A DNA stretch of 63,320 nt, counting the filler, from Syncephalis fuscata S228 (Eukaryota; Fungi; Zoopagomycota), in assembly GCA_025786725.1 (NCBI GenBank). It is 4 parts of 4 records of this genome, joined end to end, with 100 filler letters (N's around TTAATTAATTAA, not from the genome) between each part and the next. Parts side by side here need not be neighbours in the genome. Positions count along the whole stretch, not along the records: positions 1 to 31,464 come from JAHLTZ010000086.1; 3 more parts are not named here. One strand, written 5' to 3'. Position numbers and translations under genes: made by a program. Shown here piece by piece: positions 1,027-27,308 of the stretch (the stretch's first letter is position 1; every line of letters starts with the position of its first letter). The notes under the pieces were generated by a model. It made no database searches. It saw nothing but the letters and a program-made list of their open reading frames with translations, and had not been told where the DNA came from.

Positions 1027-3400
1027 TTATTTAGCATTCTTTTTGCTAAAACGGACCTTGCGAGGTGGCAGACTCCCTTTGTTTTTGACGCACAATGTCT
1101 TGTATTTGGAATAACGGATGCGTTTTGGACTGCGGGTTGGAGGACTAGGTGCTATATGCCGCCGTGTTCCTGTTACCCGTGGTGGCGATACACGTGCTGG
1201 TGCTGGTGCAACAGCTACTGCTGGCGTGACCGGTGGAGCTGTTACCGGTGTAGTAGCTGTTGCTGTTGGTGGTGGAGCTGTTACTGGTGTAGTAGCTGTT
1301 GGTGGTGGTGGCTGTAATGCTGGTGGTGGAGGTGGAGGTGGAGGCGGTGGTGCTGGTGCTGATCCATTGTTGAACCAAGAACAGTTCAATGCCTGGGCGA
1401 CGGTATACCGTGTGGTACTATCTAGATCTAGTAATCCTTCCATCAATTGAATGGCTGCAGTGTATTAGTTAATGTTAATAAAAAATATATAACTTACCTT
1501 GATTACTTAACCCGTTGATTCTTCCCCGGCCAAATGTGGGCGGATTCTGTAGTATACGCCTCATATACATAGATTGGGTCTTTACTATGCTATATGGGCA
1601 GCGTCCTAATTAACAGTATTAAACAGTTAGTATTTGCTTTTGTTTTTGTTTGCACTTACCCAGTAACATCGTATGGAGCGTTGCTCCCAAGCCCCACATA
1701 TCGGCGGGCTTTCCATACCCCTTAGCATTCAACAATGCTGAAGGTAGCCGATCTTTGGCCCCAGGCATGCTTTTGATGATATCCTCCATATTCTCCCGCC
1801 TATTAGTTCCCAAAAGCACCTCAGGTGCCATGTAGGCAACTGTGCCGCAAAAAGTGGTCACAGTTAGTGAAGGAGGGAGAATGCATGCCATCCCAAAGTC
1901 TGTAAATACGACTCTGGGACCCCCCTGGCCACCAAACAACAGCATGTTGTCGGGCTATTTAAATGTTAGCAATAATTACAAATATTTAATAAATACTTAC
2001 TTTGATATCTAAATAACAATAGTAATAATAGTAATAATAGTAATAATAGTGATTAGTGATTATATTAATTAATAGGTTAATGTATTTACCACGATGAATG
2101 ATATTCATGCTATGAAGGTGCTAATAAAATGTTAGTATTTTAATTAATGTTTTATACTAGTACTTACTTGAATACCTTCAAGCAGCTGTTTAAAGATATA
2201 TTTTGCTTCCATCTCTGGAAGTGGGGCTTTTGAGACGATGTGATTAATTAGATCACCGCCTGTTGCGTACTCAAGAGACAAGTACGTGTTCAGGGCGGTG
2301 ACCGTACCATCTAAAAAGCCTATTACGCCAGGGTGGTTACCCACCGCACGTAATGTGGCGACTTCATTATTGAAGCTTTTAAGGCCGCTTCCTTTTGATG
2401 ATACTTTGACCGCAACACGTTCGCCTGTGCTGCGGTCAAATCCCATGTAGACTTGGCCAAAAGCGCCCCTAATATAAATAATTAGTAGCTAATTAGTTAG
2501 TTTAATTTATTACTTACTCTCCAATGGGCTTATCAACAAGCATGAACTTCTGGTTGATTTTCTATAACATTAATAAAATAATATTAGCAATATTTAAATA
2601 TAATTGTAAACTTACCTTTTCGTATTCTTTGCTGTCTTCTATTTTTACAGGCTTATAATGTTTAATGATGTATATATTAAACGTTACTGCCACGCATAAT
2701 TAGAAATAATCATAAATAATCACTTGTCACTTACTATTGTGGCCAGGTATTGTGACAACACAATCACCAGCAACTCTTCTTGACTCACTGGCACTCAATT
2801 CAATATTATTGACTAAAATAATTGTTAGTGAAATAATTACTATTACTTGTTTAAACTAACCCATTAAAACATCTAGTTCAATGTTCTAAATCACTAATTA
2901 GTATTAATAATGTTAAATGCCCATTTACTTACTTTGAATGTAATAAAACCATTCGACTATAATAATTCATAATTAGTACCCATTTATCAATGCAAAATAT
3001 TATACTTACTACTAAAAATTTGAAGCATTGATCTGGCAAAGATGCATTATTCAGGCGGACGTTGCTGTTTAAATGTGTATGATATTAGCTTATTATTTAT
3101 GTATTGTTTTAAATAATTACCAGCCTTGATCGGACCCAACAGTATAACTCCTATTTCTTATCAACAGAATTTCTAAATAAACACTAGTTAGATATATTTA
3201 TACTTAGTATTGTTTAACTTACTTCTAGATCCTGCTTCATGGATTCTAGCCCATGCAATGGTGTTAGCACGCATGGGCATAGACAGAGTGTTCCAGATTT
3301 CTGGAACGTTATAAAACATCAAATCCTCATCACTTAGAAGATTTAATGGCTGTTGAACAGCAACAGCAGCTGGGGCGGTTGGGGCGGAAGTAGAAGACAT
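1027..3400 (-). CDS. FHA-domain + Ser/Thr protein kinase (Chk2/Rad53/Mek1-like), many introns, Pro-rich tail
   Basis: Spliced reading gives IGEGAFGQVY, VAVK, HRDIKPDN, DFG, GTVAYMAPE, ADMWGLG. N-terminal exons read YTVGSDQGC..VNN.EL..GD.V.I (FHA-like). Canonical gtaagt/ag introns. Confidence 0.85.
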
Positions 3401-3534
3401 TTTTATAAAATATAAAATAAAAATGAGTAAATGGGTAAATTTCAAGTTGAAAGTTATAAACTGGAAGTAGAGCTGTAGAAAAAGTAAGGTAAACAATTAT
3501 GTATTGCTCTTTCGTTTATTTAAATATTTACAGC

Positions 3535-4060
3535 ATTATAGTAGCAATTAATGTTGAAGCCAATGCCGCAATTGCAATCAGTATTCTAAGAATCATCAGA
3601 ATGCAAATCAGCGTGGAAGGCAATACAGCAATGCCAACTGATATTCTAAAAAGGTATAATACCAATCAGTATTCTAGGAAATATTGTAATGCCAACTAGC
3701 ATTGGATGCAATGTCACAACACCAACCATTATTCTAGGAAGCATTGCAATGCAAATCAGTATTGAAGACAAAGCTACAGTGCCAACCAGTATTTTAAAAA
3801 AAGCACAATGTAAATCAGTATGGAAGGCAACATCACAATGTAATTTTTTATTCTAAAAATATTACAATGTCAATCAGTACTGGATGCAATGTTAGAATGC
3901 CAACCAGTGCTGAAGACGATGTTATGTTGCCAATCAATATAGAAAGCATTGCCACAATGTAAATCATTATTGACTGCAATGCTACAATGCCAACCAGTAT
4001 TCTAAGAAATAGTACAATGCCAACCAGTATAGAAGGTGATACAAGAATAACAATGTAGGC
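3535..4060. repeat. degenerate ~30-bp tandem array upstream of the kinase
   Basis: Core 'atgc(c/a)a(a)(c/t)cagta(t/c)t' recurs about every 30 nt, roughly 17 units. Confidence 0.65.
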
Positions 4061-5230
4061 AAACAATGCTTTTAAAAGACACAAAAAGCCCATGTGGATA
4101 AATGGTTTATTTTTAGTGTAGCAAACAGGCAAATTACTAGCCAACAATCAAAGCGCCAACCGCAGCAAATAAAGAAACAGCTACAAATAAACCATTGATG
4201 CCATTGAATGCTACAACACAAAGAAAAGACTAACAGCGTGCTGCAGACTTTATAGTGACAGTGAAATAAGGGCATTGTTTTGCATGATGCATAGTAGCAT
4301 CAAAGTATTGTTCTTAAATGGTGCAGAATGGCATCAGATTATTGGTTCCAGGCGATGCAAGTGGCAGCAAACTATTGTTCTTGAATACCATTTTGCGTCA
4401 TCATATTGATACAATATTGCAAATAATGGCAATGACAGCAGAACATTGTTCCTAGATAACACAAAATGGCATATCATTGATACAGTCATCCAAATACACA
4501 GTTTATTTGTTTAAAAATAGAACATTCGGAGCAATGCTTTGTCTTATTCAAAATATGGCATTCTATGGCCATAAGCTGAACTAGAAACTATACCAGGAAC
4601 TGGGTAATTAGCTTTTATCGCCTTTGTATGCTGTAGGCTAAACGAAGTCTATCTAGAAGAACGGCCATACATATAATAATTAACACTTGTAAACATATTT
4701 TAGCAAGCTAAAAAGAATATGTTTTTATTTATCAACATCTTAAACCATCTTATACACCAGTTCAAGTAGTTATGTACAAATAGATTGGTAAAATAAATAG
4801 TAAAATAAATAAATATAACATTTTTGCAAACATTAACCATTTAGTATGATTTAATGGCCAAATGACTACATCTAATAACATTTGTTTTATTAAACATAAA
4901 AATGGGTGGTAAATGATGTCAGTCATCAAATACTCATCATCGTAGATCAATTATCCAGTATGCATATATCTTCTATCCATTTATATCATTTCCATTGTAT
5001 ATCCATACAACTATATACTATTCTATGATATACAGACAATATATATTTGTTATATATATTAAATCGTTTTATTGCTTAATAAATAATATAGCTTCAATGT
5101 TGCTATTTATACTTTCTCATTGTATATTTATGATATTCTATAACTGTATAATACATTAGATATGCGCTAGCTAAAACTGCTGTTCATTTGACACTATTTT
5201 GTTATTTATAAATATCAACTCATTTATTTT

Positions 5231-6284
5231 ATTAAATCACTAGCAATACAGTTGCGATGTTGTTATTCATTCACATGCTTATCATTCTGCTATAGAATAG
5301 ACATAAACTGTTAATAAAATATTTATTGCTACCTGTATTTATAATTGACATGGAAGCACACTTCAGTATAACTGGATGGACAATCGAGTCAACCGACTGG
5401 TGCAGATATGATTGTTTTGTGGACAAGTGTAGAATAAAAAAGGGACTATCATCTGATCTAGTGGTGAAATGGCATCCGTGCACCAAAATGGTCCAGCCAG
5501 GCGCAATACACCAATAAACAGTCGCCATGTACTCTACCAATATTGTCCATTCTAATTGGTGGATATATTTTGGAATAAGCTTATAAGGCTGTGCTGAGCG
5601 TACTTTTGCTCATTACTTCGCTTTCTCTTGTTTCTAGTTGTTAATATGCTGTAAACTGCTTGTTAATGGAAGCATCTGTTCTAGTAGCTATATCCAGTGG
5701 TGAGTGGTCTCCTTGTTGGTTGATCACGATATACTGCGTTATGCATTTGAGCTGTGTTGAATGTAGAATACAGTAGTGCAGACTACTGTGCTATACTAGC
5801 TCAGCAACTATATGGTTGCCTGTACTAGGCAGCTGTATACTGGCATAGTGCGGAGATATGTGGGATAACAGGGTGTGCAGTACTGTGTTTAGCAAGTCAG
5901 TATTGCTGTGCACTCCCCTCATGTTGATGCGGCGACCCGTATGGGTGGTCATATGTTAGTGCTCACTTGTATTGAACGTGCACTGGAGGTGTGTTTGATA
6001 GCCTTCAACTTGCTGAATACTATCATCGCACACTAGACTGGTGTGATATGTGGCTTATTCGTACTGAATACCATGCATTACACTGTTTACTTGTGGGTGT
6101 TGTTAAACGATTGTAATAGAACACTAGTCGCCATACCATTTTAGTTTTCAACTGCCGTGCTAGATACTCTATACAACACTGACATAAACAAGGACTAACG
6201 ACCGAAAACAAATGGCATCTCTACTACTAATAATGTCTTAGCGTAGACTGGTTACTATATTACAATCATTTAATGACATATCAG
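5231..6284 (+). pseudogene. degenerate 28S (LSU) rRNA domains IV-VI segment
   Basis: In canonical order: attaaa.ca.tagca..ttgcgatg (H65-66), gtc..gac..gtgca (H71), gtgaaa, actcta..attgt..gaataag, catctgtt 5673, gggataacagg 5862 (PTC), tgctcac 5960 (A-loop-like), gaacgtg 5974, gaggtgtgttt 5986, tacaatc 6261. Confidence 0.65.
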
Positions 6285-6540
6285 TATATGGTGATGTGCT
6301 GTTTAGTTGTAATATGTTGTGGTGCTCATGTGTTCAGCTCTAGACATCAACTACAAATGGGTGAATCCATAGTTTGGTGCAGCTTATTGCTACGCTTGAA
6401 TTACCATGGCATCTTGTAACATTTATTGAACAGCATCGCCATCAAGATAGCAGCTAATATAGAGCTGTACGCATCCGACAAATATTACTTACGCCCAAGT
6501 CGTAGTAGTGTCGGTACTCCAGGTGGACGTATAGTTGCTG
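6285..6540 (+). pseudogene. degenerate 18S rRNA 5' end fused to 18S 3' end (middle deleted)
   Basis: tatatggtgat ~UAUCUGGUUGAU; agttgtaatatgttgt ~AGUAGUCAUAUGCUUGU; aactacaaatgg ~AACUGCGAAUGG; ctacgcttgaattaccatgg ~CUACUUGGAUAACCGUGG; agctaata; then cgccc-aagtcgta and tccaggtggac ~UCCGUAGGUGAAC. Confidence 0.6.
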
Positions 6541-6561
6541 TATTAGCTGCTATCTTGTTTA

Positions 6562-6730
6562 ACAACTTTTAACAACATTTCTAGTTTATTTGTATAGCAG
6601 ATAACAACAATACACAAACAACTACACTCGTGTACACTATAAACTATACGCAAGGAACAATCAACTAGATGTAGGTGCTTATTACTACTAAACAATACTA
6701 ACGCACTTTTATTATAGCTATTCAAGCATT
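6562..6730 (+). pseudogene. degenerate 5.8S rRNA segment
   Basis: acaacttttaacaac (6562-6576) matches the 5.8S 5' start as recalled for zygomycetes; aacgcac 6700-6706 ~GAACGCAC at the expected distance. Confidence 0.6.
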
Positions 6731-6734
6731 GGTG

Positions 6735-7260
6735 CCGGATCAACAAGTATATCTGAACTGCATTTGTTATCGGACACAAATATTTTGCATGCAACTTACA
6801 ATACCAACTATAGAATTCGTTGGCACAAGCATTGACAACAATACTGTATACTGTCGTTGGTACTATTGTTTGGACCGGATTCTAAATGGGACATATACTT
6901 ATCTGGTTTATATTACCCAACACTAACTGGCATTGCTATTGCGCATCTGCTAAATGCTTTGGTTTGATTGAAGTGGTGGTAATAAAGAGGGAGGTGGTGG
7001 GCATTACACATATATTACATTGAAATGGTAGATTTAATAAAGAAGCGCATGAGGTGTTTGCTGAATCGACATAACACTGTGACTCCATTACTAGTTTGTC
7101 TAATGTTGTGCTTATTATGTTTAATAAAACTATAATACTGGTACATGTATTCAATTAAAGTCACTGATACTTGAATGGCTAGATTACAAGTAGCTACATT
7201 CAATACTGCATCTACGCCAACTATTTTAATAATAGTGCCAATGATTTATTTATTGCTGTG
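6735..7260 (+). pseudogene. degenerate 28S rRNA 5' segment (domain I into D2)
   Basis: ctgaactgcat..cgga ~CUGAACUUAAGCAU..GCGGA (6753-6774); ttgtttgg 6866; tctaaatggg 6881; tgaaatggtaga..gaagcgc ~UGAAAUUGUUGAAAGGGAAGCGC (7021-7048). Confidence 0.6.
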
Positions 7261-7272
7261 TTATTTATTGCC

Positions 7273-8131
7273 ATTTAACATGATCCAGTGGTCAAATGGC
7301 TGCATTTAATAGCATCTAATCTATTGAACATGATGATGGGTGGTGAGTGACATCAATCATCAAATACTTATCGTTGTAGATTCATTATCCAGTATGCATA
7401 TATTTAGTACACATATACTTTATTCACCTATATCATTCTATTTTATTCTATAATGATATATATCATTTTATAACATACTAGACACATTCTATTGTTTATA
7501 TGTTTCAATATACTTTATTCACACCACTCATTATGCTATACACACTATAGCTTTGACATCGTTTTATATGCTTTCTCACCGTACATTTACCATTTTATAT
7601 ACTATTCTATACTCGCCTAGTCTTCCTTTATCCAGAACTGCTTTTATGTTTGTTCTAGCTTTATTATTAATAAATCTTGACTAATTCTGCTCATTGGTCA
7701 TGCATATATTTTCAACAACTTTGACACTACTAATCGTCACTTTAGTTTGGATATTCATTATACAACTTTATTGATTTATTACACAAGAGCTACGAACCGA
7801 CTAAAGTCGCTGTCCGTCTGGTTCTAGCTGTATTATTGATAAAGCTTAGTTCATTTACTCGTTAGTCTATATATACTTGAGATTTATAGCAAATGGGCTG
7901 TCTACTATGTGATATAATGATATATAGTAGTGTGGAATAAAATGGGAATGATATAGGTGAATAAAGTATATGTGTACTGAATATATGCATACTGGATAAT
8001 GAATCTACAACGATGAGTATTTGATGATTAATGCCATTCACCACTCATCATTATGTTCAATAGATTAAATGTCCACTTCAATTATGCAAATATTATATAT
8101 GTAGTCATTTGACCACCAGATCACATCAAAT
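7273..8131. mobile_element. non-autonomous TIR element (MITE-like), ~860 bp with ~150-200 bp imperfect TIRs
   Basis: Left arm ...tcaaatggctgcattt...atcaaatact...ttatccagtatgcatata mirrored by ...tatatgcatactggataatg...gagtatttgat...gtagtcatttgacc; many related copies in the window. Confidence 0.75.
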
Positions 8132-9892: not shown

Positions 9893-10415
9893 GGTGGATT
9901 GAGTAAATGGTAGGTAATAATGTGTGGGCAAGAGAATAGCAAGAATGGTCAAACGGCAAATAGATACATTAATTCCGTAGGCCTTTCACCGCCATTCCTG
10001 ATACAGATACCAATTAACCAATTAACCAACCATCTGTTTAGCCGCATCTCGGCCAACGTGGGCTGGCAGATAAGTCCTTATTTGGTAGCTGAATAATAGG
10101 TGCTATAATGCTTATAACCATTATTGTTACCATGTAGTCGAATATCGGCCACATGCAGCTACAAGGGTCAATAAACGCGGATCACAGCAACCTGTTTGTT
10201 TCGTAAATCTCGTACATGTGGAGTATGGAATAAACCCGTCCATTCTCAATATAAACAGCTGATACATTCATGTAGTATTCATCAGTTAATTCCCTATCGT
10301 CGCATTGTCATATAGCACTTTGTTAACAAAGTATTGATTACTTTGATTGAAAAGAGCATATCATAAATTTTCACGTCTTTTATTCCGCAATATTGTAACT
10401 ATTACTCTGCAAATC

Positions 10416-11371
10416 ATGCATCTGGATGAGCATTTAGCAGACTATAGTGCCATTGAGCTTCTTCAAGAAGCTCATAATGTAAAAGAGTTACAGGCCCGAT
10501 TCGTCAGTATACGAGGCCAGACAGCCATTTCCACAGCTTTATTATGTATATTTTTACGTAATACTTACTATGCTTTGTGCGTTATCTTTCGGCGTCCTGA
10601 CCGACTTGCTTCTTGGTGCTGTCTATTTATGTGTATGACTGGCACTTTAGTCCTGGCAATCACCTTGCTAGGATATAACTTGACAGGCGAGATTTCATGT
10701 CGAGAATCAACATGGATGCAAGCTATTGGCGATGTTATCTTTAACACAGTCATCAATATTATAATGCTTGAACGCGCATATCTTGCTTACCGTCGCAACA
10801 AGTGGATGTTAGTGTTTGGCATTCCTATTCTGATTATTCCACCTGCTTTATATCTTTATGTTTTTTCGAGCGATGTTGTAGCACATTTTGACACTGAATA
10901 CGCATGTCATACAACCTATCCTAAATATATCCCCTATGTCCACGCCCTTTTAGACTTACCGGCGTGCATTGTCTTTTCTGTTGCATTTTTCATCGTAGTC
11001 TATCGCCAATATAGCTTGGTTGGACATCAGTGTTGGCAAAAGCTAGCACGCGACGGTATTATCGCTATGCTTGCCATTATTTTTGCCGACATTTTCTGCT
11101 TGATTGGCAATTTGGCATTTCCCGTTTATTTAATGAATGATATTATTTTTCTGCTTGACTGGTAAGTTTAGTATGAATACAATGAATTAGCAAGCTAACA
11201 CTGTTATTTAGGGGAGGCCTTTCAACCTTGATAGTCAAGCATGCACATGATTCAGTATTTAAACACAAATATTCCATGGACACAAAAACCCATCCCATAG
11301 CTAAAACAACACAATTTGTTCAAACAAGTATTACGGCTAGTGAATTCACGAGAATAACATTGGATTATTGA
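10416..11371 (+). CDS. multi-pass (7TM/GPCR-like) membrane protein
   Basis: About 7 hydrophobic segments, ERAY motif, one intron 11162-11211, stop at 11369-11371. Confidence 0.7.
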
Positions 11372-13879: not shown

Positions 13880-16735
13880 TTAAATTTGTTAATAATGAAG
13901 TTAGAACAAACATAAAAGCAGTTCTGGATAAAGGAAGACTAGGCGAGTATAGAATAGTATATAAAATGGTAAATGTACGGTGAGAAAGCATATAAAACGA
14001 TGTCAAAGCTATAGTGTGTATAGCATAATAAGTGGAGTGAATAAAGTATATTGAAACATATAAACAATAGAATGTGTCTAGTATGTTATAAAATGGTATA
14101 TATCATTATAGAATAAAATAGAATGATATAGGTGAATAAAGTATATGTGTACTGAATATATGCATACTGGATAATGAATCTACAACGATGAGTATTTGAT
14201 GATTGATGTTACTCACTATCAACTAGCATGTTCAATAGATTAGATGCTATTAAATGTAGCCATTTGACCACCGGATCATGTTAAATGGCAATAAATAAAA
14301 CAGCAATAAATAAATCATTGGCACTATTATTAAAATAGTTGGCGTAGATGCAGTATTGAATGTAGCTACTTGTAATCTAGCCATTCAAGTATCAGTGACT
14401 TTAATTGAATACATGTACCAGTATTTTAGTTTTAATAAACATAATAAGCACAACATTAGACAAACTAGTAATGGAGTCACAGTGTTATGTTGATTCAGCA
14501 AACACCTCATGCGCTTCTTTATTAAATCTACCATTTCAATGTAATATATGTGTAATGCCCACCACCTCCCTCTTTATTACCACCACTTCAATCAAACCAA
14601 AGCATTTAGCAGATGCGCAATAGCAATGCCAGTTAGTGTTGGGTAATATAAACCAGATAAGTATATGTCCCATTTAGAATCCAGCCCAAACAATAGTACC
14701 AACGACAGTATACAGTATTGTTGTCGATGCTTGTGCCAACGAATTCTATAGTTGGTATTGTAAGTTGCATGCAAAATATTTGTGTCCGATAACAAATGCA
14801 GTTCAGATATACTTGTTGATCCGGCACCAATGGTTGAATAGCTATAATAAAAGTGCGTTAGTATTGTTTAGTAGTAATAAGCACCTACATCTAGTTGATT
14901 GTTCCTTGCGTATAGTTTATAGTGTACACGAGTGTAGTTGTTTGTGTATTGTTGTTATTTGTTATACAAATAAACTAGAAATGTTGTTAAAAGTTGTTAA
15001 ACAAGATAGCAGCTAATATAGCAACTATACGTCCACCTGGAGTACCGGCAATACTACGACTTGGGCGTAAGTAACATTTGTCGGATGCGTACAGCTCTAT
15101 ATTAGCTGCTATCTTGATGGCAATGCTGTTCAATAAATGTTACAAAATGCCATGGCAATTCAAGCGTAGCAATAAGCTGCACCAAACTATGGATTCACCC
15201 ATTTGTAGTTGATGTCTAGAGCTGAACACATGAACACCACAACATATTACAACTAAACAGCACATAGCCATATACTGATATGTCATTAAATGATTGTAGA
15301 ATAACTGCTAGCTTTCTCTACAATACAATCGATAGTAGAGCTACAATTCTATTTCAGTCGCCATTGCAGAGGACCTTCGGTCAGTCAAATTAATTTTCGT
15401 GTAACGCAGTCGAAAATCAAACAGTATGGTAGCTAGTGTTATTACAATCGTTTAACAACACCCACAAGTAAACAGTGTAATGCATGGTATTCAGTACGAA
15501 TAAGCCATATATCACACCAGTCCAGTGTGCAATGATAGTATCAGCAAGTTGAAGGCTATCAAACACACCTCCAGTGCACGTTCAATACAAGTGAGCACTA
15601 ACATATGACCACCCATACGGGTCGCCGCATCAACATGAGGGGAGTGCCAGCAATACTGACTTGCTAAACACAGTACTGCACACCCTGTTATCCCACATAT
15701 CTCCGCACTATGCTAGTATATAGCCGCCTAGTGCAGGCAACCATATAGTTGCTGAGCTAGTATAACACAATAGTCTGCACTATTGTACTCTACATTCAAC
15801 ACAGCTCAAATGCATAACGCAGTATATCGTGATCAACCAACAAGGAGGTCACACACCACTAGATATAGCTACTAGAACATATGCTTTCAGCAACAAGCGG
15901 TTTACAGCATATTAACAACTAGAAACAAGAGAAAGCGAAGTAATGAGCAAAAGTACGCTCAGCACAGCCTTATAAGCTTATTCCAAAATATATCCACCAA
16001 TTAGAATGGACAATATTGGTAGAGTACATGGCGACTGTTTATTGGTGTATTGCGCCTGGCTGGACCATTTTGGTGCACGGATGCCATTTCACCACTAGAT
16101 CAGATGATAGTCCCTTTTTTATTCTACACTTGTCCACAAAACAATCATATCTGCACCAGTCGGTTGACTCGATTGTCCATCCAGCTATACTGAAGTGTGC
16201 TTCCATGTCAATTATAAATACAGGTAGCAATAAATATTTTATTAGCAGTTTATGTCTATTCTATAGCAGAATGATAAGCATGTGAATGAATAACAACATC
16301 GCAACTGTATTGCTAGTGATTTAATAAAATAAATGAGTTGATATTTATAAATAACAAAATAGTGTCAAATGAACAGCAGTTTTAGCTAGCGCATATCTAA
16401 TGTATTATACAGTTATAGAATATCATAAATATACAATGAGAAAGTATAAATAGCAACATTGAAGCTATATTATTTATTAAGCAATAAAACGATTTAATAT
16501 ATATAACAATATATATTGTCTGTATACCATAGAATAGTATATAGTTGTATGGATATACAATGGAAATGATATAAATGGATGGAGGATATATGCATACTGG
16601 ATAATTGATCTACGATGATGAGTATTATGGACCCTGGCATGATTTACCACCCATTTTCATATTCAATAAAACAAATGTTATTAGATGTAGTCATTTGGCC
16701 ATTAAATCATACTAAATCATTTGTGTTTATTTATA
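13880..16735 (-). mobile_element. composite repeat copy B (inverted; distal MITE truncated)
   Basis: Reverse complement of 20765-23938, nearly identical but lacking the SINE. Confidence 0.85.
14300..16318 (-). ncRNA. rRNA-derived structured element, copy B
   Basis: Reverse-complement copy of 21522-23540. Confidence 0.7.
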
Positions 16736-20553: not shown

Positions 20554-20828
20554 GTACTGATATACATTAATAAAACAAATTTAAATAATGAATACAGTAT
20601 ATCTTTATTTATGCATAAAACACGGCAGTGTGTAGCGTTATTGCACCACGCGGTTCATATTTTTCGCCACAGATATCAATATATTATAATTACAATTAAT
20701 TATTTAAAGATGCAATACAGAGTTGACATATTGTGTGTCATTTAATATTATTATAAATTTTGTCTATAAATAAACACAAATGATTTAGTATGATTTAATG
20801 GCCAAATGACTACATCTAATAACATTTG

Positions 20829-21148
20829 GATTTGGATTTTATTAGCTTAAGTGAGACAACGGTCCGTAGGACCTAACCGCGCATTTGCAGCATTTGTCTG
20901 CCACCCCTAGGAGAATAGACGGTTCATTTCGAACCTATCCGCGCGCAACGCAGAACCTGCCATCTACAACTGAAACCGTTGGTGGCTCTCCTCACGTGTT
21001 GGAATATCGACCATTTCTTCTACGTCGACCATTTCTTCTACGGAAGGATCCCATCACGCATTTCCTGAAAACAAGATTCGAACTAGGCGAACCAACATTT
21101 TCCTACTTTAGGGAAGACGCGTTGACCGTTTAGGCCACCACGCCTCCC
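20829..21148 (-). mobile_element. full-length tRNA-derived SINE (~320 bp)
   Basis: 20-bp TSD actacatctaataacatttg (20809-20828/21149-21168); box A TGGCCTAAACGG (21126-21137) and box B GTTCGAATC (21075-21083) on the minus strand; 3' stem-loop GGTCC-TAC-GGACC; (AAATCC)n tail. Confidence 0.88.
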
Positions 21149-21521
21149 ACTACATCTAATAACATTTGTTTTATTGAATATGAAAATGGGTGGTAAATCA
21201 TGCCAGGGTCCATAATACTCATCATCGTAGATCAATTATCCAGTATGCATATATCCTCCATCCATTTATATCATTTCCATTGTATATCCATACAACTATA
21301 TACTATTCTATGGTATACAGACAATATATATTGTTATATATATTAAATCGTTTTATTGCTTAATAAATAATATAGCTTCAATGTTGCTATTTATACTTTC
21401 TCATTGTATATTTATGATATTCTATAACTGTATAATACATTAGATATGCGCTAGCTAAAACTGCTGTTCATTTGACACTATTTTGTTATTTATAAATATC
21501 AACTCATTTATTTTATTAAAT

Positions 21522-23540
21522 CACTAGCAATACAGTTGCGATGTTGTTATTCATTCACATGCTTATCATTCTGCTATAGAATAGACATAAACTGCTAATA
21601 AAATATTTATTGCTACCTGTATTTATAATTGACATGGAAGCACACTTCAGTATAGCTGGATGGACAATCGAGTCAACCGACTGGTGCAGATATGATTGTT
21701 TTGTGGACAAGTGTAGAATAAAAAAGGGACTATCATCTGATCTAGTGGTGAAATGGCATCCGTGCACCAAAATGGTCCAGCCAGGCGCAATACACCAATA
21801 AACAGTCGCCATGTACTCTACCAATATTGTCCATTCTAATTGGTGGATATATTTTGGAATAAGCTTATAAGGCTGTGCTGAGCGTACTTTTGCTCATTAC
21901 TTCGCTTTCTCTTGTTTCTAGTTGTTAATATGCTGTAAACCGCTTGTTGCTGAAAGCATATGTTCTAGTAGCTATATCTAGTGGTGTGTGACCTCCTTGT
22001 TGGTTGATCACGATATACTGCGTTATGCATTTGAGCTGTGTTGAATGTAGAGTACAATAGTGCAGACTATTGTGTTATACTAGCTCAGCAACTATATGGT
22101 TGCCTGCACTAGGCGGCTATATACTAGCATAGTGCGGAGATATGTGGGATAACAGGGTGTGCAGTACTGTGTTTAGCAAGTCAGTATTGCTGGCACTCCC
22201 CTCATGTTGATGCGGCGACCCGTATGGGTGGTCATATGTTAGTGCTCACTTGTATTGAACGTGCACTGGAGGTGTGTTTGATAGCCTTCAACTTGCTGAT
22301 ACTATCATTGCACACTGGACTGGTGTGATATATGGCTTATTCGTACTGAATACCATGCATTACACTGTTTACTTGTGGGTGTTGTTAAACGATTGTAATA
22401 ACACTAGCTACCATACTGTTTGATTTTCGACTGCGTTACACGAAAATTAATTTGACTGACCGAAGGTCCTCTGCAATGGCGACTGAAATAGAATTGTAGC
22501 TCTACTATCGATTGTATTGTAGAGAAAGCTAGCAGTTATTCTACAATCATTTAATGACATATCAGTATATGGCTATGTGCTGTTTAGTTGTAATATGTTG
22601 TGGTGTTCATGTGTTCAGCTCTAGACATCAACTACAAATGGGTGAATCCATAGTTTGGTGCAGCTTATTGCTACGCTTGAATTGCCATGGCATTTTGTAA
22701 CATTTATTGAACAGCATTGCCATCAAGATAGCAGCTAATATAGAGCTGTACGCATCCGACAAATGTTACTTACGCCCAAGTCGTAGTATTGCCGGTACTC
22801 CAGGTGGACGTATAGTTGCTATATTAGCTGCTATCTTGTTTAACAACTTTTAACAACATTTCTAGTTTATTTGTATAACAAATAACAACAATACACAAAC
22901 AACTACACTCGTGTACACTATAAACTATACGCAAGGAACAATCAACTAGATGTAGGTGCTTATTACTACTAAACAATACTAACGCACTTTTATTATAGCT
23001 ATTCAACCATTGGTGCCGGATCAACAAGTATATCTGAACTGCATTTGTTATCGGGCACAAATATTTTGCATGCAACTTACAATACCAACTATAGAATTCG
23101 TTGGCACAAGCATCGACAACAATACTGTATACTGTCGTTGGTACTATTGTTTGGGCTGGATTCTAAATGGGACATATACTTATCTGGTTTATATTACCCA
23201 ACACTAACTGGCATTGCTATTGCGCATCTGCTAAATGCTTTGGTTTGATTGAAGTGGTGGTAATAAAGAGGGAGGTGGTGGGCATTACACATATATTACA
23301 TTGAAATGGTAGATTTAATAAAGAAGCGCATGAGGTGTTTGCTGAATCAACATAACACTGTGACTCCATTACTAGTTTGTCTAATGTTGTGCTTATTATG
23401 TTTATTAAAACTAAAATACTGGTACATGTATTCAATTAAAGTCACTGATACTTGAATGGCTAGATTACAAGTAGCTACATTCAATACTGCATCTACGCCA
23501 ACTATTTTAATAATAGTGCCAATGATTTATTTATTGCTGT
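21522..23540 (+). ncRNA. rRNA-derived structured element, copy C
   Basis: As copy A; also agctaccatactgtttgattttcgactg (22406-22433) ~28S AGCUACCAUCUGUGGGAUUAUGACUG and gtattgtag..tagcagttattctacaatc ~28S 3' end. Confidence 0.7.
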
Positions 23541-24514
23541 TTTATTTATTGCCATTTAACATGATCCAGTGGTCAAATGGCTGCATTTAATAGCATCTAA
23601 TCTATTGAACATGCTAGTTGATGGTGAGTGACATCAATCATCAAATACTCATCGTTGTAGATTCATTATCCAGTATGCATATATTCAGTATACATATACT
23701 TTATTCACCTATATCATTCTATTTTATTCTATAATGATATATATCATTTTATAACATACTAGACACATTCTATTGTTTATATGTTTCAATATACTTTATT
23801 CACACCACTCATTATGCTATACACACTATAGCTTTGACATCGTTTTATATGCTTTCTCACCGTACATTTACCATTTTATATACTATTCTATACTCGCCTA
23901 GTCTTCCTTTATCCAGAACTGCTTTTATGTTTGTTCTAGCTTTATTATTAATAAATCTTGACTAATTCTGCTCATTGGTCATGCATATATTTTCAACAAC
24001 TTTGACACTACTAATCGTCACTTTAGTTTGGATATTCATTATACAACTTTATTGATTTATTACACAAGAGCTACGAACCGCCTAAAGTCGCTGTCCGTCT
24101 GGTTCTAGCTGTATTATTGATAAAGCTCAGTTCATTTACTCGTTAGTCTATATATACTTGAGATTTATAGCAAATGGGCTGTTTACTATGTGATATAATG
24201 ATATATAGTAGTGTGGGATATAATGAGAATGATATAGACGAATAGAAGATATATGTGTATTGAATATATGCATACTGGATAATAATCTATGATGATGAGT
24301 ATTTGATGATTGATGTCACTCACCACCCATCATCATGTTCAATATATTGAATATTATTAAATGTAGCCATTCAATCCTCATATCATACTAAATGTTAATT
24401 ATATAATATGCTATATGTCATGTAACATTATTATACACTTTTTATGAACAATTTATTAGCATTTTCTATTTAACTTAATATTTAATTCATATTAATTATT
24501 ATCGGTTACAAGCA

Positions 24515-26693: not shown

Positions 26694-27075
26694 ACTTTAA
26701 AATATATAAAAGAGGAATTCAAACTATGTAATAAAACGAGCTGCAAATGGTTTTGTTTTTTAACAAACAAAAGCGATGATCAATCGCTGTTACCATCTTA
26801 ACTTGTTATTACCATATTTAGAACAATAAATTATTTGGTTCCCACATTAAGAATCATAGCTGTATATATTTGCCATATTCCAGGCGTTTTTTACTTGTGC
26901 AAAATGTGGTTATACAACTAATTAATTTTTATTATCAATAAAAAATATCCAAGACCTTCTTACATCATTACACACATTATATTTTATAGCTGCATCACAG
27001 TTAATTGCAATTATTATGCTTGTTATTGTAACGATTGTTACTAGGTAGCACTTATTATGGTTTTATTACAATTGT

Positions 27076-27185
27076 ATCTACAATGATGAGTATTTGATGC
27101 CTGATGTCATTCACCACCCACCATTATGTTCAATAGGTTGGATGTTATTAAATACTAGCCATTTGATCACCAAAGTGTATTAAAT
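27076..27185 (-). repeat. solo MITE arm
   Basis: atctacaatgatgagtatttgat...caccacccaccattatgttcaata...agccatttga, same family as 7273-8131. Confidence 0.75.
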
Positions 27186-27308
27186 TATTATTATTGTTAT
27201 TTACTTGTAAAAGACAAGATTAAATATTACTGTCTAAATAAAACAATAAAATCAGTTTAATTCGTTTATTGGTCTAAATTTAGTTATTACATGGTAACAG
27301 ATATTGTG

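What the first reader, a model, noticed from the sequence alone, without database searches (positions are those of the whole stretch)
5360..6610. Copy-to-copy substitutions mostly preserve a new, non-ribosomal fold on one strand
Seen, A versus C: G5773-C5786 becomes A22057-T22070 in the stem tacagtagt/actactgtg. The adjacent A-C mismatch becomes G-U. Several G-U/A-U swaps occur (ctgtat/ctatat, tggcatagt/tagcatagt, gcagataa/acaaataa, and ctgtatt/ctatatt in the 20-bp stem 6443-6462/6538-6557). A few changes break pairs. The long stems (6288-6307/6425-6442; 6443-6557) join segments that do not pair in ribosomes. Inference: selection acts on single-stranded RNA structure in the + orientation, so the element has been refolded rather than decaying.
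Basis: seen in the sequence. Interest (0 to 1): 0.8.

Follow-up and report, generated by a model that had tools for sequence, protein, structure and literature searches.

The report
Multicopy folded fungal RNA, hypervariable cassette
A fungus that parasitises other fungi (Syncephalis fuscata) carries about 60 copies of an undescribed, spliced non-coding RNA gene whose fold is kept by selection while one 70-letter segment changes unusually fast, and two thirds of the copies sit head-to-head with a gene of one expanded protein-kinase family.

Summary
The listed A-versus-C changes are real. Across 35 distinct copies, a fold predicted from one copy is kept in distant copies by compensatory changes (38 versus 19±3 and 27.5±3 in shuffles), and changes giving A·C mismatches on + are depleted while G·U-giving ones mostly are not. 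No single pair passes a strict all-pairs test. The ribosomal origin is not supported: no match to Rfam or to the genome's own rRNA. The element is one of about 59 copies of a gene with CCAAT/TATA boxes, an ~1.07-kb folded first exon, a GT-AG intron spliced in one public run, and no conserved reading frame. The genome is Syncephalis fuscata. New features: an invariant loop-loop complement (5892-5897/6008-6013); a hypervariable, length-constrained ~70-nt cassette (6142-6209) on a covarying stem, changing far faster than introns; and head-to-head linkage of 38/59 copies to a lineage-specific Rad53/Chk2-like kinase gene. Best reading: a structured lncRNA scaffold presenting a diversifying specificity segment, probably in conflict with host or virus. 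The target and mechanism are inferred, not shown. Evidence comes from one genome and one run.

The parts
1027..3400 (-). Multi-exon Ser/Thr kinase gene (Rad53/Chk2-like, probable degenerate FHA region), divergent from the RNA gene; G-loop, VAVK, HRD-IKPDN, DFG and APE motifs read intact across exons
   Evidence: Sequence read exon by exon; family search; relatives P0003/P0004 are Pkinase, best PDB match Rad53; FHA-clan hit only weak, E=0.058
3532..4070 (.). Degenerate 30-nt tandem repeat between kinase and RNA gene of copy A
4828..5032 (+). Left TIR-like end of the abundant MITE-like family; left border of the unit shared with copies B and C
5433..5600 (+). Conserved Pol II-type promoter: CCAAT 5511-5515 and 5537-5541, reverse CCAAT 5555-5559, TATAA 5582-5586
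   Evidence: Seen in sequence, conserved in the alignment; promoter function inferred
5605..6670 (+). Exon 1 of copy A: conserved multi-domain RNA fold; start inferred near 5610-5625
5892..5897 (+). Hairpin loop GCAAGU, invariant in 35/35 copies; complementary to 6008-6013 (candidate kissing loop)
   Evidence: invariant, so no covariation support
6008..6013 (+). Hairpin loop ACUUGC, invariant in 35/35; partner of 5892-5897
6097..6279 (+). Long covarying stem with side hairpin (6097-6141/6210-6279) that carries the hypervariable cassette
   Evidence: 12 of 19 pairs of the middle helix show double changes
6142..6209 (+). Hypervariable cassette, 62-74 nt, 33 distinct sequences in 42 copies, 17 mutually unalignable types, no fold better than shuffles
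   Evidence: no match outside the family for two cassettes tested
6288..6557 (+). Two long imperfect stem domains (6288-6442 and 6443-6557) with many compensatory changes
6671..6717 (+). Intron 1, 47 nt, GT..branch point..AG; GT in 34/35, AG in 31/35, branch point in 29/35 copies
   Evidence: joint 6670 to 6718 in run X1
6747..6813 (+). Intron 2, 67 nt, minor joint; acceptor AG in only 16/35 copies
6718..7035 (+). 3' exon(s): unstructured, no conserved open frame; transcript end about 6950-7035
7265..8072 (.). MITE-like element of about 800 bp with inverted ends of 170-200 bp
13884..16728 (-). Copy B of the TIR-bounded unit (RNA gene without kinase)
21149..24352 (+). Copy C of the TIR-bounded unit (RNA gene without kinase), 99.6% identical to B over 2.8 kb

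Best explanation
A Syncephalis-specific family of about 59 RNA polymerase II lncRNA genes. Shown: multicopy; conserved promoter-like boxes; transcribed and spliced from the + strand in one run; fold kept by strand-specific purifying selection with compensatory change; no conserved reading frame; a ~70-nt cassette that diversifies much faster than introns; spread as DNA segments, mostly head-to-head with one kinase subfamily and in one subfamily between MITE-like ends. Inferred: the conserved 5' domain (pentaloop hairpins, loop-loop contact) folds into a compact core that binds the fungus's own proteins or other copies of the RNA, and the long stem holds out the cassette as an exchangeable specificity element (base-pairing guide or protein decoy) under diversifying selection, most plausibly in conflict with the host fungus or a virus. 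The kinase linkage is read as an ancestral divergent gene pair, probably co-expressed; direct RNA-kinase binding is possible but untested. Probability that it is a functional structured ncRNA family about 0.8; that the cassette is a selected specificity element about 0.45.
For: 59 motif-defined copies; held-out covariation; strand-specific depletion of A·C-giving changes; consensus energy -325 versus -200; run X1 contigs lie over 5596-~7035 with summed depth 3e4-3.7e5 versus 0-12 in unique flanks, with GT-AG joints; intron signals conserved and no codon periodicity; cassette divergence 0.15-0.68 in pairs whose intron and 5' core differ by 0-0.04, e.g. L020/L021 0.38, L043/L044 0.42, L042/L045 0.68, probable alleles L001/L002 0.15; invariant loop-loop complement, none like it in 20 shuffles; 38/59 copies head-to-head with a kinase exon within 5 kb, and 35 of the 38 best-scoring kinase loci are linked.
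Against: One genome and one run, whose RNA status is a tool guess and whose contig depths cannot rank genes. No single pair significant in the all-pairs test. Copies are mosaic, so events are not fully independent. No target found for the cassette; host genomes could not be searched. Kinase exons are 98-100% identical between modules whose cassettes differ by 17-42%, which argues against lock-and-key pairing of cassette and kinase. 21 copies lack a head-to-head kinase. Some cassette change could be gene conversion in an unconstrained linker.
Confidence: 0.5

Rival explanations
1. Hairpin precursor family for small RNAs (pri-miRNA/milRNA-like). The long imperfect stems of the 3' half are Dicer substrates that yield varying 21-25-nt RNAs, possibly delivered to the host through the haustorium.
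For: Stems 6097-6279, 6288-6442 and 6443-6557 are long, change sequence quickly and keep pairing; capped/spliced Pol II anatomy fits pri-miRNAs (own knowledge); only weak miRNA-like Rfam scores.
Against: The best-conserved part is the branched 5' domain with invariant loops and a loop-loop complement, which Dicer precursors do not need; long contigs cover the whole transcript; the fastest-changing part is the unpaired cassette, not a stem arm.
Confidence: 0.18
2. Self-assembling ornate RNA in the manner of bacterial ROOL/GOLLD: the core forms an RNA-only oligomer through kissing loops and the cassette is an unconstrained linker that varies by drift and gene conversion.
For: Size, many helices, invariant complementary loops; ROOL and GOLLD each have a variable, disordered linker inside a conserved cage (PMC12286853).
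Against: No Rfam match to these families; spliced eukaryotic Pol II gene; cassette length is held at 62-74 nt and it changes faster than introns, more than loss of constraint alone gives.
Confidence: 0.15
3. Non-autonomous mobile element whose RNA fold serves its own retrotransposition (SINE, LARD or retrozyme-like).
For: High copy number, MITE-like ends around the A/B/C subfamily, abundant RNA.
Against: Copies retain the intron, the upstream promoter and often 1.4-2.4 kb of upstream DNA with an intron-rich kinase gene; no LTR, poly(A) tail, ribozyme hit or clear target-site duplication.
Confidence: 0.08
4. mRNA, or relic of one, with a long structured 5' UTR controlling a small hydrophobic peptide in the 3' exon.
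For: One 3' frame reads as a hydrophobic stretch of 55-85 residues in several copies.
Against: The frame has stops or frameshifts in most copies, no third-position excess, no Pfam or Atlas recognition (1213), no intact donor gene in the genome; UG-rich RNA gives hydrophobic translations by composition.
Confidence: 0.06
5. Refolded rRNA-derived sequence.
For: A few short words resemble LSU rRNA by eye.
Against: Searches are all negative.
Confidence: 0.03

Closest known systems
ROOL, GOLLD and OLE ornate bacterial RNAs (PMC12286853)
   Same: Large, many-helix ncRNA with conserved loop-loop contacts; ROOL and GOLLD have a variable linker within a conserved fold
   Different: No sequence or covariance-model match; eukaryotic, spliced, Pol II-type promoter, about 59 paralogues in one genome, kinase-linked; oligomerisation untested
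Multicopy lineage-specific ncRNA families of microbial eukaryotes, e.g. Plasmodium RUF6, Dictyostelium class I RNAs (own knowledge)
   Same: Dispersed multicopy family; RUF6 lies beside an expanded gene family
   Different: Those are 40-140 nt and unspliced; this is about 1.3 kb, spliced, with a hypervariable cassette
Kinase-regulating RNAs, 7SK/P-TEFb and adenovirus VA RNA/PKR; type III toxin-antitoxin RNAs (own knowledge)
   Same: Abundant structured RNA associated with a kinase or conflict protein
   Different: Association here is genomic linkage only; cassette and kinase do not co-diversify; no Rfam match
Pack-MULE/Pack-TIR gene capture (PMC8277862, abstract only)
   Same: Copies A, B and C lie between long TIR-like ends of an abundant family
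   Different: Explains the spread of one subfamily only; no TSD found; most copies travel with the kinase instead
Eukaryotic LSU/SSU rRNA
   Same: Nothing measurable
   Different: No homology by covariance model, profile HMM or local alignment

Membership tests
rRNA-derived element | Detectable homology to LSU or SSU rRNA | tested here: not met
Any Rfam 15 family (ROOL, GOLLD, OLE, SRP, RNase MRP, telomerase, group I/II intron, ribozymes) | Covariance-model score at gathering threshold | tested here: not met
   best E 2.6; none at E<=1 in six divergent copies
Structured lncRNA under selection | Compensatory and strand-specific substitution in aggregate | tested here: met
Structured lncRNA under selection | Individually significant covarying pairs (R-scape style) | tested here: not met
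   home-made test, few independent lineages, mosaic copies
Structured lncRNA under selection | Transcribed and spliced, no conserved ORF | tested here: met
   one run, contigs only
Retrotransposon/SINE/retrozyme | Intronless copies, LTR or poly(A) with TSD, ribozyme | tested here: not met
Pack-MULE (A/B/C subfamily only) | Long TIRs at both ends plus 9-11-bp TSD | tested here: inconclusive
   TIR-like ends present; no clear TSD
pri-miRNA/milRNA precursor | Dicer-dependent 21-25-nt products from the stems | not testable with these tools
   No small-RNA run available
Guide RNA | Variable segment complementary to a target | tested here: inconclusive
   No match in own genome for two cassettes, none above chance in held loci or own rRNA; host genomes not searchable
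Type III-like protein/RNA pair | RNA variable part co-diversifies with the linked protein | tested here: not met
   (four pairs, partial kinase exons only)
ROOL/GOLLD-like RNA cage | Homo-oligomer held by intermolecular kissing loops | not testable with these tools
   Only a candidate loop pair

The most novel reading that the evidence does not exclude
A eukaryotic family of long, ornately folded effector RNAs in a haustorial mycoparasite, each presenting a different ~70-nt specificity cassette on a conserved ribonucleoprotein scaffold, co-inherited with a dedicated checkpoint-type kinase family and used against host or viral targets: an RNA counterpart of hypervariable effector protein families.
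Probability: 0.25. Interest if true: 0.95.

Novelty: categorically new. Interest (0 to 1): 0.76.

Why it matters
Long eukaryotic ncRNAs with evolutionary support for an extended fold are rare and disputed (own knowledge). Here some 59 paralogues in one genome give an internal comparative set that supports a 1-kb fold. The mix of conserved scaffold, fast-changing fixed-length cassette and tight linkage to an expanded kinase family matched no family in Rfam and no paper in the searches run. It points to an RNA-based specificity system in fungus-fungus parasitism, and offers direct tests: probing, small-RNA sequencing, host-target search and kinase pull-down.

Tried and rejected
rRNA origin. Rfam at gathering and E-value level. 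All-pairs G-test with tree-based null: top scores were phylogenetic or alignment effects, no predicted pair significant. G·U versus A·C asymmetry against unpaired sites of the fold was not significant (p 0.17-0.5), a control biased by few unpaired G; the promoter/intron/3' exon control was used instead. Single-copy strand z-scores were inconsistent. Coding potential of exon 1 and the 3' exon. Cassette targets in own genome. Homologues elsewhere: 72 metagenome and 1 viral pattern hits, none confirmed by the profile HMM; one of these records is labelled human-gut metagenome, a microbial assembly, not taken for human DNA. Run X2 holds one 245-nt contig identical to copy A at depth 2, probably carry-over, not a second species. 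Kinase N-terminal region found only in S. fuscata proteins. The kinase was searched exon by exon; the joined model was left out.

Full report
Setting. The window is contig C357 of a 29.36-Mb, 371-contig intron-rich genome. A paralogue of ORF 10347-11165 and two relatives of the window's kinase are named Syncephalis fuscata, and the two kinases lie on contigs of 187,396 and 448,744 bases, the lengths of C304 and C146 here. The genome is therefore S. fuscata, a haustorial parasite of other zygomycete fungi (lifestyle from own knowledge). The window holds three copies of the element: A (+, about 4830-8070), B (-, 13884-16728) and C (+, 21149-24352). B and C are 99.6% identical.

Observation. On A's own fold, 10 of 14 substituted pairs outside 6115-6265 stay paired in a C-type copy and 4 break. 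Two sequences prove little, so I collected the family. A conserved 17-mer finds 59 loci at 0-1 mismatch. 42 copies were held in full, 66-99% identical to A, and 35 remained after removing near-duplicates. The consensus fold gives -324.8 on + and -200.2 on -; the tool's default run gives 192 pairs, 52 with a double change. To avoid circularity I took pairs from one copy only (probability >0.8) and scored them in distant copies. From A: 38 Watson-Crick-to-Watson-Crick double changes against 19.0±3.3 when partners are shuffled within pair type and 27.5±2.8 within helix (p<=0.001). From L020: 30 against 16.9 and 20.2. From L037: 29 against 22.2 and 25.1 (p 0.026, 0.067). The strand is fixed by asymmetry. 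At paired sites G>A (12/73) and T>C (12/86), which give A·C on +, are far below the rate in promoter, intron and 3' exon (67/99, 71/157). A>G is unchanged (40/86 versus 72/152) and C>T is only mildly lower (32/73 versus 62/91). The result repeats with two other reference copies. Negative results: my R-scape-like all-pairs test found no predicted pair significant; single-copy z-scores are below shuffles on both strands and do not always favour +; copies are mosaics, so counts are not fully independent.

Not ribosomal. Rfam gives nothing. The genome's own LSU and SSU were fetched. Neither blastn, nhmmer, a 35-copy profile HMM nor local alignment against shuffles links them to the element.

A gene. 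Upstream of the fold lie CCAAT boxes (5511, 5537, reverse 5555) and TATAA (5582), conserved across copies. In run X1 (RNA by the tool's guess, 2017) contigs cover 5596 to about 7035 with summed depth 3e4-3.7e5, against 0-12 in unique flanks, and show GT..AG joints 6670/6718 and 6746/6814. Splice joints and empty flanks indicate RNA from the + strand. Contig depths cannot rank genes, and reads from all copies are pooled, so 'abundant' is likely, not measured. Intron 1 signals are kept in most copies (GT 34, branch point 29, AG 31 of 35), ORFs differ from copy to copy, and there is no codon periodicity. A hydrophobic-looking 3' frame is broken in most copies and unrecognised by Pfam or the Atlas. 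The 3' part does not fold better than shuffles (z +0.4).

Anatomy of the RNA. A basal stem (5629-5644/6559-6574) closes three domains. The 5' domain is the best conserved; it has several hairpins with GURAU-like pentaloops (seen in the alignment) and two loops, GCAAGU (5892-5897) and ACUUGC (6008-6013), that are complementary and invariant in 35/35 copies. No such pair arose in 20 shuffles, but invariance gives no covariation proof. One subfamily has a 112-nt insertion at 5881 that duplicates hairpins. A long covarying stem (6097-6141/6210-6279) carries a cassette at 6142-6209. It is 62-74 nt long, has 33 distinct sequences in 42 copies, falls into 17 types with no mutual BLAST match, and has no fold beyond shuffles (mean z -0.4). 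It differs by 0.38 between L020 and L021, 0.42 between L043 and L044, 0.68 between L042 and L045 and 0.15 between the probable alleles L001 and L002, where intron and 5' core differ by 0-0.04. A few pairs share the cassette while differing elsewhere (L001/L005, L004/L013), which shows exchange of segments between copies. Two cassettes searched against the genome match only family members.

Genomic partner. Upstream of A, on the other strand, is an intact-looking multi-exon Ser/Thr kinase gene (1027-3400), searched exon by exon; the joined model was left out. Its family has about 80 loci. Annotated members match Pkinase, with Rad53 as best solved structure and only a weak FHA-clan hit for the N-terminal part; that part has no relatives outside S. 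fuscata in two searches. 38 of 59 RNA loci lie head-to-head within 5 kb of a kinase exon, and 35 of the 38 best-scoring kinase loci have an RNA gene. Shared upstream DNA extends 1.4-2.4 kb. Copies thus spread as DNA segments with introns and promoter. The A/B/C subfamily also moved without the kinase, between long TIR-like ends of an abundant MITE-like family; no clear target-site duplication was found. Kinase exons are 98-100% identical between modules whose cassettes differ by 17-42%, so the cassette is not a key cut for its neighbouring kinase. Linkage may reflect a shared divergent promoter and co-duplication rather than physical partnership.

How it most likely works. Shown: expression, splicing, selection on the + strand fold, cassette hypervariability, kinase linkage. 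Inferred: a conserved core forms a compact ribonucleoprotein or oligomer and displays the cassette as a specificity element under diversifying selection, in conflict with host or virus; a tombus-like virus is reported from this species (PMC7482067). I put 0.5 on this, 0.18 on a small-RNA precursor, 0.15 on a self-assembling RNA with a free linker as in ROOL and GOLLD (PMC12286853), 0.08 on a selfish retroelement, 0.06 on a small-peptide mRNA and 0.03 on rRNA origin.

Novelty. No Rfam family, no confirmed homologue in metagenome or viral collections and no paper in the searches run describes it. These searches do not cover other Zoopagales genomes or subscription journals, so absence is provisional. 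Limits: one genome, one run, no sister species, no target, 17 copies unread. Interest 0.76.

Noticed in passing
window 1-31464 versus G000:C224:~24000-55000: C357 looks like an alternative haplotype of part of C224 (copies A, B and C have counterparts in the same order and orientation); the C224 counterpart of the window's kinase has stops in the exon searched.
   Followed up: partly
window 13884-16691 and 21149-23956: 2.8-kb inverted duplication, 99.6% identical, flanking an SRP receptor alpha gene; similar inverted pairs occur at C35:269-277 kb (two RNA genes facing each other around a kinase) and C157:27.9-37.2 kb (two kinases with MITE-like elements).
   Followed up: no
window 7265-8072 and partial ends at 4828-5032, 24180-24402, 27070-27195: Abundant MITE-like family with 170-200-bp inverted ends (the 3.4-kb query holding it drew 1063 first-look candidates); its ends show some coverage in run X1.
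   Followed up: partly
window 20828-21149: 321-nt insertion inside the left TIR-like end of copy C; its end sequence recurs beside a MITE copy in L053, suggesting a nested element.
   Followed up: no
window 3532-4070: Degenerate 30-nt tandem repeat (about 17 units) between kinase start and RNA promoter of copy A; no open frame of 80 aa on the + strand.
   Followed up: no
window 10347-11165 (+): 272-aa hydrophobic multi-pass ORF whose only other relative found is a S. fuscata hypothetical protein (31% identity).
   Followed up: partly
G000 kinase family, about 80 loci: Lineage-specific expansion of Rad53/Chk2-like kinases with variable proline- or alanine-rich tails; several copies are broken (C113:287.5 kb, C116:3 kb, C224:26.2 kb).
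   Followed up: partly
L017, L026, L038, L041-L048 at the position of window 5881: 112-nt insertion made of duplicated hairpins, showing modular growth of the 5' domain.
   Followed up: partly
G000:C127:5488, C2:305623, C46:60760: Three loci match the 3' exon but were not found by the core motif: truncated or more divergent members.
   Followed up: no
window 5605-5612 and 5715-5721: Further conserved complements among unpaired segments: the 5' end with loop 5891-5896, and 5715-5721 with 6659-6665 just before the splice donor; possible alternative folds.
   Followed up: no
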